A DNA stretch of 63,199 nucleotides, counting the filler, from Choristocarpus tenellus KU-1152 (taxonomy: Eukaryota > Protista > Phaeophyceae), in assembly GCA_964200185.2 (NCBI GenBank). It is 8 parts of 8 records of this genome, joined end to end, with 100 filler letters (N's around TTAATTAATTAA, not from the genome) between each part and the next. Parts side by side here need not be neighbours in the genome. Positions count along the whole stretch, not along the records: positions 54,858 to 59,531 come from CAXNAD020013512.1; 7 more parts are not named here. One strand, given 5' to 3'. The notes below the pieces were generated by a model, which did not search any database, was not told the origin of the DNA, and saw nothing but the letters and a program-made list of their open reading frames with translations. Made by a program: the position numbers and the translations under genes. Shown one piece after another: positions 53,974-59,531 of the stretch (position 1 is its first letter; each line of letters starts with the position of its first letter).

Positions 53974-55779
53974 GCAAGCGTTAGAACTCTCTCGTATCAA
54001 TATGTATACTCCTCTATTTGTGCAGATTCCCAGTACACATGGTTGTGGGCATGAAAACACACCCATGCGATCATCCGTGTCAAGCCTCGGGGGCACTCCC
54101 TCTTGGTTTGCCCTTGCTTTTTTGCCTCTGCCATTGCAAACACTGCCCCCATCTCCCCTACCCCCTGGGTGTCATGCACCACGTCATATTTTGGACTGAA
54201 TCTAAAGATTCATTTTTTTTTATACCGTCGACCTGGTCGGAGTGCTCTTGTGCTACGGCAGAGTACAAGCTGCTCCAGGGTACTCTGTAGCACTCTGTAC
54301 AATATATATATATACTTTTCACAAGAGTATGCATTTGTAGCCACTTCGGCAGCACGTGTTTATGGCATTGAGGAGGACATGCGCGGACTGGAGGTCCAGG
54401 TGATGGGAAAAACCGCACCTTGCACCTTGTAGAAGCACTCAGCTGTGCTGCAACAGCAGCAACCCTAACCCTAATCCCCTGTGTGCGGTTGTTGCCCTAC
54501 GCATGCCGTCTCTACAGACCAACCTCAGGATGTACCCTTTTTTGTCAAGTTCGGCAGCAGTCGGTTCACGTATGGATAGGGTTAGGACTTAGCCTCGGGT
54601 GTGGCAAAACCTAATCCTAACCCTAACCCTACATGTCAGGCGGCTACTACTCCCAACTCTTCACGGCAAATCAGAAAAGTGGAATGATGAAAAATAAAAT
54701 CCAAAAACGTGTTCAGCCTCCCCCGCCACGCAAGAAAGAATAAGCGTGTGTGTGTGGNNNNNNNNNNNNNNNNNNNNNNNNNNNNNNNNNNNNNNNNNNN
54801 NTTAATTAATTAANNNNNNNNNNNNNNNNNNNNNNNNNNNNNNNNNNNNNNNNNNNNCTGATGTTCAAGATAGGTCACCTTCAGGGTATACCTTCTGTGG
54901 AATGTGGCTCTCACATATTAAAATATTTTATTGATAGCGAACTCATTATTTCTCGAAGTGGCATCGAAGTAACTGCATCCCACTGTGTGTTTATGCATAG
55001 TAGTTGTAGTGGTGATGGTGACTGACAAGGGATTTGGTGACGTAGGATGTTGTAGTGGAGCATTCAAGGGGCAGCATGAAGTAGTATGTAGTGTTAATAG
55101 TAGTTACAGTAAGTCGGTTTCATTCTTAGTTCCAAGTTTTAAGTAATACAACAGTGACAAGATGCAATTGGACAAGATTAGTGTTTGTATGATGTATGTA
55201 TGAACACATTACTTCAAAGTATGATAACATTACGTATTACTGGTGTGGATGTTCTGCTAAGTTTCTTTGATCACAAAACATGCTACTACTCCAAGCACTT
55301 GATAATGCAAGGTATTGTTAATATTAGTAGTAGTTAATAGGTAACTTAGTTCAACTTGGTTGTTAATAGGCTGGTTAGTATTAGAGAGCACAAGCTTGCA
55401 TCGTGGATGGTGAAGGCATATATACTACGTAATAGCACACACAATAAATTGCGCATTACCTTGTGAACAACAGTAAGCATTTTTGAGCCAAAAAATTAAG
55501 AAGTAAGAAGGGTTGCATTTTAAGGATCCCGAAAATGGACGAAAAGTACCTCTTTTGTACAGGGGCAGAAAGAGCCCTTGCTTAATTGTGGGAATCACCT
55601 TACATGTAGAAGGGAGAACTTCAATATTGCGTACACTATTGTGCATGTAAAGCAATGAAATAGTGTATTGCACAGGATAAGCTAGACGACATAGAATGCA
55701 AAAGGACCCAAGCCTGTCTACCTCTCCATTGGTTTGACTGATTATTGCTCCTATACTGTATATGCAGCACAAAATAGAT

Positions 55780-56000
55780 ATTTGAAATATTTTCATTCCA
55801 ACATTGTCAATAGGAATGTCTAGGGCCAATATATGGGGCAACGTATGTGCTTGTCTCTTCAACACCTCCTCCCTGATACCTATGCAACAGTTGTTGGATT
55901 AAGTTCAAGGGTGCATTGATGATTTGAACAACACCACAGTCCGATGAGTAATGAGCCTCTATACTTGGAATGTATCTGTTGAACCGGATGATTGGGCGTA
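55780..56000 (+). mobile_element. Possible decayed non-LTR reverse transcriptase fragment
   Basis: GNVCACLFN...GCIDDL...LGMYL loosely echoes QG..LS..LFN / YADD / YLG. Weak. Confidence 0.25.
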
Positions 56001-56460
56001 TCCCAGCAAAGAACCAAACTGAGGGGTAAGTGGGTTGCATTGTAAAGATTCCCAGAAAGGGTAATATTATGGCATTTGTACAATTCCAGAAAGAGTCTTT
56101 GCCAAATTGTGGTGTCACTTAAAGAGGGAGTATCAGTTTTGGATACTAAAATACTATTCACCAAAGAAATGAGCAATGAAATAGAGTACTACACAGAGAG
56201 GGTAAGAAAGGTGGGTTAACTCGTATTGAAAATATTAACATTTTTTATCGCTGTATTATAATACTGTCGAGTAGTATTGCCGTATAAATAGTAATGTGTG
56301 TGTGCAGGCGTGCTCTGTCATCATAGTAGTATCACGATGATACGGAAAATAAGTGTAACCGTGTTTGAGCTTCGAGAATGTATACTGTTTGTGGTGCAAA
56401 GCTAGAAAGAAGTTTACCGAGACTAGTGATAAACCTCTTCTTGGGGCCTATCTGGATCAT

Positions 56461-59257
56461 ATGTACGGGAAAGTAGTCGCTGGCAGAGTGAGCGCTGCCT
56501 TCCTTTTACTTTGTTCTGCTTCCTTGCATGGCTCCGTCGCTGTCTCGGATGAGCTGTACCTGAACGTGGTTCCTGCCAACACCTCAGACTGCCTCGACAA
56601 GGTAGTCTGCAACAACGGTGATCCGGCCGCCAAGGACCCATATTTACCCTATGTCTGGGAAAATTGTATTCCGCACTTTATGCGGTCATGGCCGAATAGT
56701 GTGTCGAATTTCAGAAGCTCAAGCTACCTCCACAATCCCATTCACTTAAAAATAAAGCAAATTGCAAAAAGAAAACACCGAGCGCTGCCTGTACCCGCCC
56801 TTCTGACCTCAGATTGCATCAGTAGTATTGCAGGAATACGAGTTCCGCTATGATAGTGTCAAGGGTCGTAGGCAGCTTGGTGCAGTGGGTTCAGACGTGG
56901 AAAAGATCATCCCAGAGAGCGTGGAAATACACGAGAAGAGGGTCTTCCCCAGCCCTGTCAAGGCGAGCAAAGAAATAGCGAGATAGTCATGACTATAGTC
57001 CTACGACAAGTGCCCCTCTTGATACACCTGTCATAGATGACCAGAGGCTATATTTCGTAGCTTCCATTTTAGTTTCTATTTCTACTTCAAATAGGCGTTT
57101 CGTCAGCAGTGACCTGATCCTTGCTCCCATCTCCCTTTACTTGTACTGTTACTTGCTGTGATCGTCTCTACTATCCTACTGCGTGAATAGGGTCAACCAC
57201 CAATCACTCTAGAGAATGTATTTGTGGTGGACAAGAATGTACTGTTTATGCACAACGTTGGTGCTACGCAGGAGCTGATGAATCTTCACGAAGACCTCAA
57301 AGAACAGGCAAGGGATGAAATGATATAGGGTGGATCTATCTCCTCGACATATCCCTCAACGGATTAGCTGCGGCCCACACAGTCACCTCTTGTCTCAGTT
57401 AAGCGCAATAAGATTGCCCCGTACCTGATGCAGTGGTGTAAGGCCATAGCAACAAGCCAACACTAGATTGATCTGACGAATGGACAGATCAATGATATCC
57501 TAGAACAGGATGAGCGCATGGACTTCATTGTTGCTGAAATTGAGGCCAAGATGGTTAAAGAGGCGGAAGCACAGCTGGTGGAGCGCGCAAGGTCTGATAC
57601 GATATTTCTACCTTGAGTAAAGCTGGTAGTCCAGTCACAACATCTCCAAGCTAGGCAAATATTACATTATTAGAATTATGCATCCAAAACGACAACATAC
57701 TAGGCTAATGAGTCAGGAAATCAAATATTGTGTCAACCGTCGAGTTGATATCCCTCATTTCGCTTTACTCTCTGGGATAGGATTGTCGAAGCAGAAGCAG
57801 AGACAGCACGTCTCAGCATTGAGCTGGAGCGAGTCAGGGCAGAGGAGAAGAGAAAGACTGAAGAAGTGGAGGTGCTGTCAGATTAGACTCTTGCTCCAAA
57901 TTTGAGGCTTGTGCTGAAAGACTGTTGGACCCCTTCCTTGCAGCTACTGTCCATCATTTTTGTATGCTTTGAAGTTGGCTCTTGAACTCATTGAGGAGAC
58001 CACAGATAGGAAAACAGGCATAAAGTGTATGCCAGGTTCTCAATCTGATACACTTGCTGTTCAATTTATTTGACTGTCTTTAGGCCGATCAGCAACGGAA
58101 AGTCGTGGAGCACCAGGCCGACCTTGCAAGAGCAAAGATGGCAGCAGAAGCTGAAGCACAGAGGGCCCAAAATGAGATGCTGCTTCAATTGCAGGTGACT
58201 CTTCTTACTGAAACCTACTATTGCTATTGTGTGTGAAAAATGAGTTCTCATGCCGTGTCAAACCACCTCACTCATAGTTACTGTTGGACTCACCTGGTAC
58301 ACTTGCAGATAGGAGGTTGAGTAACTGAGACACAAGGATTGAATGTTGCAGCAGAGGAAGGGTGTTGAGGTGCAATGACCTCAATCACAAATTGCACGAA
58401 GAACAGACTTTTCTGCACTCTCTGCATGAAAACATCAACACAACGCCCTTCTTCATTTGCCCTCGGGCGACCTAGGAAGAATCAGGCAAGCGGAAAGAGA
58501 CCCTCCGAATTGAGACAGAACTGGAGTTGCGGCGGCGTCGAATGGAACAGGAGAGGGCTATGGATGCAACCAAGACACAGGTGGAATACACTCACAATTC
58601 ACTCTCCAGGGAAGCGAACAGGCCCTCAAGGCACACTTGAATCCCCTTAGACGTAAACAGAAAATTAGGCTTACTGTGCGTAAGCATTTCAAGTAGGTCT
58701 ACGGCAACCTTTTCAATTCCCCCCCTGATCAGTGCTCTGCTTTACTGTAAAAATCATGAACGAATTGCTTAGATGGAGCTAGAACGGGTCAAGATGGAGG
58801 TCCAGGCCAAATTGCAGGCAGAGAAGGAGAATGAGGATGTTACCCTCCGAAAGATACGGGCACAGGTGGGCTGTACACTTTCAATCATCAGGCACAGCAC
58901 ATTGGAATAAATTTTGCATCAACACAACTCACTTGAAAGTGTGCTTCGAAGCGTTTGATACAACATCCTACTGACAGTCTTTCCTCTGCAAAATATTCAG
59001 TCTATTCAGATTCCCCCCCAATTTCTCGTGACGGAACTCAACAGCTTGCCTAGGTCCCCACTCACTGGAACAACCTGTCAATCGACTCCTGTGTGAATAG
59101 TTCACTGACTTACCCCAAGAAAGTAGAGTGCTGCCCTCAAACTTCTCCTGAAAACTGCCGTACAGGGGGAGGAAGAGCGAAAGCGCATTCAAGAGGCAAT
59201 CAATACCATCATGATACATCTTACGTCTGCTGGGCTGGGACTCATGGCAGATCCAAG
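56461..59257 (+). CDS. ATAD3-like protein with N-terminal signal peptide and ICA/peptidase S74-like domain, 5' part (AAA domain expected beyond contig end)
   Basis: Exons 56461-56601, 56813-56962, 57191-57307, 57488-57591, 57781-57871, 58084-58194, 58476-58580, 58773-58865 and 59166-59257, all phase-compatible. Exons 1-4 resemble the MYRF ICA domain (ENVFVVDKNVLFMHNVGATQEL). Exons 5-9 resemble the ATAD3 N-terminal coiled coil (QAEKENEDVTLRKIRAQGEEERKRIQEAINT...LMADP). Confidence 0.85.
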
Positions 59258-59506
59258 GTATGGACACTATTCACCTGTCACCGCACAGATATAGTTGCTA
59301 GAGTCGTATCAACTAGCTATCTGCAAAGTCAAGAGGTGGCTTCAATTTCCATTGAACTATTGTAGACATTACGTGTGCTCGGAAATCAGTCTCTTCCTGC
59401 TGTGGATTTGTTTGTACTGATCCAATGATTGTAGAACTCCCTGAGTATTCTGTAGTGAGCTTTTTTCAATCACAGATGACTGCCAGCAACCAGGCCAAAA
59501 ACAGAA

Positions 59507-59531
59507 GACCCAAAGTATCTGGGAGGGGGGG
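59507..59531 (+). mobile_element. MITE family B left end at contig end
   Basis: GACCCAAAGTATCTGGGAGGGGGGG. Confidence 0.8.

What the first reader, a model, noticed from the sequence alone, without database searches (positions are those of the whole stretch)
56461..59257. MYRF/phage-type intramolecular chaperone (ICA, peptidase S74) domain fused to an ATAD3 coiled coil
Seen: nine phase-compatible exons, invisible in the ORF track, give MYGKVVAGRVSAAFLLLCSASLHGSVAVSDELYLNVVPANTSDCLDK|IASVVLQEYEFRYDSVKGRRQLGAVGSDVEKIIPESVEIHEKRVFPSPVK|GQPPITLENVFVVDKNVLFMHNVGATQELMNLHEDLKEQ|INDILEQ..., continuing into ...AEKENEDVTLRKIRAQGEEERKRIQEAINTIMIHLTSAGLGLMADP. Known: the first part follows the MYRF ICA pattern (SD...V..V.T...L..I....L..Y.Y...G.....V..I.PE.V...IENF.VVNK..IFMENVGA..EL..L...L), a trimerising chaperone domain shared with phage tail spikes. 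The second part matches the ATAD3 N-terminal (DUF3523) region just before its membrane segment. Canonical ATAD3 is a mitochondrial inner-membrane AAA+ ATPase with no ICA domain. Inference: a lineage-specific ATAD3 paralogue uses a trimer-forming ICA module to nucleate or fold its coiled coil, perhaps as a membrane tether. I know of no functional description of this architecture, but I cannot exclude that it is already auto-annotated in other stramenopiles.
Basis: partly seen in the sequence, partly recalled or inferred. Interest (0 to 1): 0.88.

Follow-up and report, generated by a model that had tools for sequence, protein, structure and literature searches.

The report
Secretory ATAD3 paralogue with dead chaperone
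Brown algae, golden algae and water moulds carry an undescribed second copy of the mitochondrial ATPase ATAD3 that seems rerouted to the endoplasmic reticulum and capped by a disabled phage-type trimer-forming domain, and this window holds its first nine exons.

Summary
Nine phase-compatible exons (two with GC donors) encode a signal-peptide-like start, a MYRF-type ICA domain and the ATAD3 coiled coil. The membrane and AAA exons lie beyond the edge of the piece. Searched exon by exon, they tile collinearly onto brown-algal proteins, and the splice positions are shared with two other algae. The fusion is not peculiar to one lineage: it is an old stramenopile family (brown algae, Chrysoparadoxa, chrysophytes, oomycetes; 119 of 121 top relatives carry the ICA), present beside a separate canonical ATAD3. 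Databases label it ATAD3/AAA, mostly miss the ICA, and no paper was found. The family has a signal peptide, a covarying N-glycosylation site and a more hydrophobic membrane helix, which point to a type I secretory-pathway protein with a luminal ICA knob on a ~220-residue helix and an intact cytosolic AAA motor. All ~40 named holders belong to flagellated groups, a lead (not shown) towards ER assembly of flagellar hairs. No RNA support was available.

The parts
56461..56601 (+). Exon 1 (47 codons): signal-peptide-like N-terminus and start of the pseudo-ICA
   Evidence: matches Ectocarpus 10-38 and L017
56461..56541 (+). Predicted signal peptide (about codons 1-24/27; small-residue cleavage sites after 24 or 27). 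Heuristic only, no SignalP available
   Evidence: family: 89 of 104 with a hydrophobic N-terminal run versus 0 of 117 canonical ATAD3
56542..56559 (+). Degenerate cleavage motif: Val28 at the catalytic Ser position, Tyr33 at the catalytic Lys position
   Evidence: hhalign register against a canonical S74; family column Y64/L24/I9/F9, never K
56578..56586 (+). N-x-S/T sequon (Asn40-Thr41-Ser42), conserved in the family
   Evidence: 87 of 107; Ser/Thr kept in 87 of 88 with Asn but 4 of 19 with Asp
56813..56962 (+). Exon 2 (50 codons): ICA core with the invariant Gly (codon at 56879-56881, equivalent to MYRF G626); GC donor
57191..57307 (+). Exon 3 (39 codons): MYRF-type ICA signature and start of the long helix; GC donor
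   Evidence: Pfam MYRF_ICA E 3.6e-6; PDB 7DC3 E 7.5e-4
57488..57591 (+). Exon 4: heptad continuation of the ICA helix, replacing the canonical ATAD3 N-terminal FDP segment
57781..57871 (+). Exon 5: ATAD3_N coiled coil
58084..58194 (+). Exon 6: ATAD3_N coiled coil
   Evidence: Pfam ATAD3_N 98-133, E 0.045
58476..58580 (+). Exon 7: ATAD3_N coiled coil
58773..58865 (+). Exon 8: ATAD3_N coiled coil
   Evidence: Pfam ATAD3_N 164-192, E 0.002
59166..59257 (+). Exon 9: end of the coiled coil and amphipathic helix just before the membrane segment
   Evidence: 70% identical to Cladosiphon 264-293
59258..59531 (+). Intron 9, cut by the edge of the piece; membrane-helix and AAA exons not held
   Evidence: no match to the homologues' next exon inside the piece, while L017 carries it and the AAA exons on the same contig

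Best explanation
The gene is the local member of an old stramenopile ATAD3 paralogue, made by duplication before oomycetes and ochrophytes split. A signal peptide plus a MYRF-type ICA replaced the canonical N-terminal segment. Shown: architecture, ICA fold, loss of the Ser-Lys dyad, intact ATPase motifs, a separate canonical ATAD3. Inferred: (1) the signal peptide sends it into the ER as a type I membrane protein, with the glycosylated ICA and a ~220-residue helix (up to ~32 nm) in the lumen and the AAA domain in the cytosol (about 0.75). (2) The dead ICA is a permanent trimer cap that sets the register of the luminal helices, not a self-cleaving chaperone (about 0.7); two such trimers could feed one AAA hexamer. 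(3) The protein works like canonical ATAD3, an ATPase that reaches across a membrane through a fixed-length rod, but moved to the ER or nuclear-envelope lumen, where the knob holds the opposite membrane or a luminal client. Its most likely setting is the flagellated stage, for example the cisternae that build tubular flagellar hairs (about 0.3-0.35 on its own). The confidence given covers steps 1-3 without that last assignment.
For: Architecture in full-length relatives; 119/121 with ICA. Profile hit to MYRF 7DC3 E 3e-17, starting after the cleavage motif. AlphaFold model of the Ectocarpus domain pLDDT 91, Foldseek 7DC3 E 6e-8, then 3GW6, 3GUD, 4UW8. Catalytic Lys column never Lys, although S578/K583 are required for cleavage (PMC3742443). 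Invariant Gly and a strong ~3.5-residue heptad at 103-150 are kept; this helix drives ICA trimerisation (PMC8326128). Signal-like N-terminus 89/104 versus 0/117. Membrane helix hydropathy 1.70 versus 1.25. Sequon covariation. One helix 103-322, membrane helix 325-360, then AAA. Rod length identical in 94/105. Walker A 106, Walker B 105, Arg finger 105 of 108. Both paralogues in Aphanomyces invadans, A. stellatus and Globisporangium splendens; canonical rows form their own clade, support 98. About 40 named holders, all from flagellated groups (life cycles from my own knowledge). S74-domain genes number 0 in five non-flagellate downy mildew assemblies versus 3-13 in four zoosporic species (PMC6264045 supplement).
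Against: No localisation, oligomer or expression data. The signal peptide is judged by hydropathy only, and in oomycetes it is followed by a basic stretch (mean +2.4). The segment after the membrane helix, a mitochondrial import signal in animal ATAD3 (own knowledge), is well conserved. Outside the one site, sequons are not enriched (0.36 versus 0.29 per 100 aa). Fixed rod length is shared with canonical ATAD3 (104/105). Beyond residue 150 the heptad signal is weak. The Phytophthora infestans gene is not in the published flagellar gene list. Absence from non-flagellates was not controlled, and the nearest Atlas cluster is mostly diatoms, though it may mix paralogues.
Confidence: 0.55

Rival explanations
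1. Same ER topology, but a general housekeeping luminal spacer or contact-site ATPase (ER sheets, nuclear envelope, ER-organelle contacts), like SUN-domain or Climp63 rods, with no special link to flagella.
For: Fixed ~32 nm rod with a trimer-type head. Broad retention. Not in the flagellar gene list. Atlas cluster dominated by diatoms.
Against: No non-flagellate species among ~40 named holders, while diatoms appear readily in the canonical ATAD3 search. S74-type domains are lost with zoospores in downy mildews.
Confidence: 0.35
2. Still a mitochondrial protein: the N-terminal hydrophobic stretch anchors in the outer membrane, the ICA and rod span the intermembrane space, and the AAA domain is in the matrix, giving an inner-outer membrane tether.
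For: The membrane helix and following amphipathic segment keep ATAD3 motifs. Oomycete members have basic residues after the hydrophobic run.
Against: Algal members have acidic residues there (mean -1.8) and a short run of ~15 uncharged residues. Asn and Ser/Thr covary as in a glycosylation site. The membrane helix is more hydrophobic than in any canonical ATAD3 sampled. A canonical copy is retained.
Confidence: 0.17
3. The ICA is an active intramolecular chaperone-protease, as in MYRF and phage tailspikes, that folds the protein and cleaves itself.
For: ICA fold is intact.
Against: Neither catalytic residue is present in the window or the family. Only a signal peptide lies upstream, with no beta-helix stalk.
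Confidence: 0.03
4. Gene-model artefact: two neighbouring genes, or a pseudogene, read as one.
For: No RNA run; two non-canonical GC donors; the 3' part is not held.
Against: Intronless single-ORF orthologues (P. infestans), collinear exons, shared intron positions and a third-position bias.
Confidence: 0.02

Closest known systems
ATAD3 (PF12037 ATAD3_N + PF00004 AAA), mitochondrial inner-membrane AAA+ ATPase
   Same: Coiled coil from profile position ~54 on, fixed rod length, membrane helix with the G-K-P-S-L-V-R-E-T-S motif, AAA motifs.
   Different: Lacks the N-terminal FDP segment (108 of 117 canonical have it). Has a signal peptide, an ICA, a sequon and a more hydrophobic membrane helix. 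Branches apart from canonical ATAD3, with longer branches, and coexists with it.
MYRF / MrfA ICA domain (PF13884 + PF13887; PDB 7DC3)
   Same: Fold, MYRF-specific signature, invariant Gly, C-terminal heptad helix leading towards a membrane segment.
   Different: No Ser-Lys dyad, no upstream beta-helical stalk or DNA-binding domain. N-terminal and probably luminal rather than cytosolic; separated from the membrane by ~220 residues.
Phage tailspike/tail-fibre chaperones (endosialidase 3GW6/3GUD, T5 LTF 4UW8/8HQZ)
   Same: Same fold family.
   Different: Those are C-terminal, self-cleaving and discarded; this one is N-terminal, dead and retained. No viral relative of this subtype found.
SUN-domain LINC proteins and Climp63 (analogy from own knowledge, not tested for homology)
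   Same: Membrane-anchored luminal rod of some tens of nm; SUN proteins end in a trimeric head.
   Different: No homology detected; opposite polarity (type I); here the other side carries an ATPase.

Membership tests
ATAD3 family (broad) | ATAD3_N (PF12037) coiled coil | tested here: met
   weak in window exons 6 and 8; E 1e-14 to 1e-40 in full-length orthologues
ATAD3 family (broad) | Membrane helix followed by an ATAD3-type AAA domain with Walker A/B and Arg finger | tested here: inconclusive
   met in orthologues; these exons lie outside the window piece
Canonical mitochondrial ATAD3 | N-terminal FDP..ER segment and no signal peptide | tested here: not met
   replaced by signal-like sequence and ICA
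Canonical mitochondrial ATAD3 | Branches with canonical ATAD3 orthologues | tested here: not met
   canonical 31 rows form one clade (98) apart from all 37 ICA rows; quick tree on orthologues only
Canonical mitochondrial ATAD3 | Mitochondrial inner-membrane location | not testable with these tools
   sequence signs point to the ER
ICA / peptidase S74 domain | ICA sequence profile and fold | tested here: met
ICA / peptidase S74 domain | Ser-Lys catalytic dyad (S-D-x-R-x-K) | tested here: not met
   Val28/Tyr33 in the window; Lys never present in the family column
ICA / peptidase S74 domain | Upstream triple beta-helix client | tested here: not met
   only a signal-like helix precedes it
ICA / peptidase S74 domain | Homotrimerisation | not testable with these tools
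   only monomers can be modelled; trimer residues conserved
MYRF transcription factors | Ndt80-type DNA-binding domain upstream of the ICA | tested here: not met
   absent in all full-length relatives scanned
Type I secretory-pathway membrane protein | Cleavable signal peptide, luminal glycan, stop-transfer helix | tested here: inconclusive
   hydropathy, sequon covariation and helix hydropathy agree, but no dedicated predictor or experiment

The most novel reading that the evidence does not exclude
A mitochondrial membrane-spanning ATPase was duplicated early in stramenopile history, moved to the ER, and capped with a dead phage-type trimer domain. It became a dedicated motor or spacer for building the tubular flagellar hairs (or ICA-folded fibres) that define the group, and it is lost wherever flagella are lost.
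Probability: 0.3. Interest if true: 0.9.

Novelty: new variant of a known kind. Interest (0 to 1): 0.7.

Why it matters
ATAD3 is known as a mitochondrial protein, and eukaryotic ICA domains are known as self-cleaving switches. This family appears to break both rules: ATAD3 moved to the secretory pathway, and an ICA is kept as a dead structural cap. It is hidden in databases under the ordinary ATAD3 label (only 6 of the 120 listed relatives show an ICA Pfam tag), so annotation and phylogenies mix two different proteins. It offers a natural test of how ATAD3 couples its ATPase to a fixed-length rod and of 3-fold versus 6-fold symmetry. It is also a concrete candidate, in genetically tractable Ectocarpus and Phytophthora, for the unknown machinery that assembles stramenopile flagellar hairs in the ER.

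Tried and rejected
The joined spliced protein was not used in any search, comparison or fold; all window searches were exon by exon, and both structure models are of the Ectocarpus orthologue P0063. No RNA run holds the stretch, so read laying gave DNA contigs only. An ICA-only word search with one query was insensitive (2 hits). Literature searches for ATAD3 with intramolecular chaperone, peptidase S74, stramenopiles or oomycete names, and for PITG_19005, found no description; an ATAD3 review I recalled is not held. Supplement look-ups for expression or proteome data gave nothing; some files may be truncated. No viral relative; the bacterial-genome scan could not run. Rejected: exon-10 candidates inside the piece; the Tox-ART-HYE1, flotillin, G3P and LPP Pfam hits as sub-threshold coiled-coil noise; the long top hits P0001/P0011/P0025 as chance matches to vertebrate fibronectin-III repeat proteins, not pursued; fixed rod length as a special ruler, since canonical ATAD3 shows it too; the fibre family as a universal partner, since its ICA nests inside one branch of the family.

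Full report
Observation. The piece (54858-59531) holds nine exons on the + strand from 56461 to 59257. They have AG acceptors, compatible phases, no stops and 334 codons in all; introns are 180-300 nt and two have GC donors. Exon 3 passes Pfam's cut-off for MYRF_ICA, exon 2 hits Peptidase_S74 weakly, and exons 6 and 8 hit ATAD3_N in order. Each exon maps to consecutive residues of brown-algal proteins, mostly at 40-70% identity. A second alga (L017) has all boundaries at the same codon and phase, GT donors where the window has GC, DNA similarity only in exons, a third-position excess of changes, and the membrane and AAA exons further along the same contig. Ectocarpus shares eight of nine intron positions. 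The window's exon 10 lies beyond the piece. The locus is a single-copy, difference-free contig in the source run. No RNA run exists here. The host is probably a brown alga or close relative (inference).

Family. Exon 2 alone retrieved full-length proteins with ICA, ATAD3_N and AAA from Cladosiphon and Chrysoparadoxa. A profile search listed 120 relatives from brown algae, chrysophytes, synurophytes and all main oomycete groups. Of 121 checked, 119 carry the ICA; the other two are N-terminal fragments. They are named ATAD3, AAA+ ATPase or hypothetical, and only six show an ICA Pfam tag. A canonical ATAD3 found in a metagenome locus led to 120 canonical proteins: none has an ICA, none of 117 has a hydrophobic N-terminus, and 108 have the FDP motif. 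Aphanomyces invadans, A. stellatus and Globisporangium splendens hold both types. In a quick tree of the AAA region canonical proteins form one clade (98) and ICA proteins lie on the other side (76), with longer branches. So this is an ancient paralogue, at least as old as the oomycete-ochrophyte split. No paper describing it was found.

The ICA is real but dead. The family profile matches the MYRF ICA structure at E 3e-17 and the T5 tail-fibre chaperone at 2e-7, with the match starting after the cleavage motif. A confident model of the Ectocarpus domain (pLDDT 91) finds 7DC3, then 3GW6, 3GUD and 4UW8. Against a canonical S74 domain the catalytic Lys aligns with a Tyr and the catalytic Ser with a variable position; in the window these are Tyr33 and Val28, and the family column never holds Lys. 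Both residues are needed for cleavage in MYRF (PMC3742443). The Gly equivalent to MYRF G626 is invariant, and the C-terminal helix keeps a strong heptad; that helix is the main driver of ICA trimerisation (PMC8326128). With nothing upstream to fold, the domain most plausibly serves as a permanent trimer cap and binding knob (inference).

Topology. 89 of 104 complete members begin with a hydrophobic run, median 15 uncharged residues. An N-x-S/T site at the start of the ICA occurs in 87 of 107. Ser/Thr is kept in 87 of 88 sequences with Asn but in only 4 of 19 with Asp, which fits glycosylation better than helix capping, although the rows are not independent. The membrane helix is more hydrophobic than in canonical ATAD3 (1.70 versus 1.25) and is followed by basic residues. 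The full-length model shows ICA, one helix from 103 to 322, the membrane helix, then the AAA domain. Rod length is identical in 94 of 105 members, as it is in canonical ATAD3. Walker A, Walker B and the Arg finger are intact. Together these suggest a type I ER membrane protein with a luminal knob-and-rod of up to ~32 nm and a cytosolic ATPase. Against this: only heuristics were available, oomycete members have a basic stretch after the hydrophobic run, and sequons elsewhere are not enriched.

Function. By analogy with ATAD3 it should couple ATP turnover on one side of a membrane to a rod on the other, here holding the facing membrane or a luminal client. All of about 40 named holders belong to flagellated groups. 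No Peronospora, Hyaloperonospora, Bremia or diatom name appears, although Plasmopara and Albugo do, and diatoms appear in the canonical search. Independently, genes with canonical S74 domains number zero in five non-flagellate downy mildew assemblies and 3-13 in four zoosporic species (PMC6264045 supplement), a pattern its main text does not discuss. Tubular flagellar hairs are assembled in ER cisternae (own knowledge). This makes hair or fibre assembly the leading specific guess (about 0.3-0.35). It is not shown: presence of non-flagellate proteomes in the database was not controlled, unnamed hits could include them, the gene is absent from a published flagellar list, and the nearest Atlas cluster is mostly diatoms, perhaps through mixed paralogues. 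A general luminal spacer is about as likely; a mitochondrial tether is less likely; an active protease or an artefact is unlikely.

Verdict. Real, conserved, mis-labelled and apparently undescribed: a new variant of ATAD3 with a probable change of organelle and a pseudo-enzyme ICA cap. It works like ATAD3 plus an ICA trimer cap, but fails membership of canonical mitochondrial ATAD3 and of self-cleaving S74 peptidases. Interest 0.7.

Noticed in passing
L001:357-2909, L021:265-1494, L030:647-1861 (P0017, P0032, P0378): A second unnamed family from GC-rich, intron-poor eukaryotic contigs: signal-like start, the same dead ICA, a Gly-rich beta-stalk-like region of variable length, then a canonical C-terminal S74 with intact Ser-Lys motif. 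Its dead ICA nests with one branch of the ATAD3-type family (support 97), suggesting domain shuffling into a secreted trimeric fibre. Host unknown.
   Followed up: partly
PMC6264045 supplementary file 10: Peptidase_S74 gene counts are 0 in all five non-flagellate downy mildew assemblies and 6, 7, 3, 13 in zoosporic species; an unexplained link between ICA-domain proteins and oomycete zoospores.
   Followed up: partly
window 56963-57190 and 57308-57487: Two of eight complete introns have GC donors; the orthologous introns in L017 and Ectocarpus are GT. GC-AG introns may be common in this genome.
   Followed up: partly
window 55510-55675 and 56032-56196: Two diverged copies (72-88%, 521 nt apart) of a high-copy interspersed repeat upstream of the gene, with depths in the thousands in both runs; further repeat-like stretches at 54858-54915 and near 59500.
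   Followed up: no
L008:187-2715, L011:109-2637 (P0341, P0356): A strongly diverged 842-aa member, widespread in ocean metagenomes (GC 37%, intronless), with a degenerate ICA (E 5e-10) and a very long branch; host unknown.
   Followed up: partly
L014:1835-3379, L015:1625-3331, L016:1697-3193: Bacterial-looking AAA proteins related to the ATAD3 AAA domain; L014 and L016 begin with signal-peptide-like stretches. Used only as outgroup (L015 dropped out).
   Followed up: no
L003-L005 and P0103: A 2OG-Fe(II) oxygenase gene neighbours the family gene in Phytophthora infestans and is joined to it in the Thraustotheca gene model, suggesting long-kept synteny useful for testing loss in downy mildews.
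   Followed up: no
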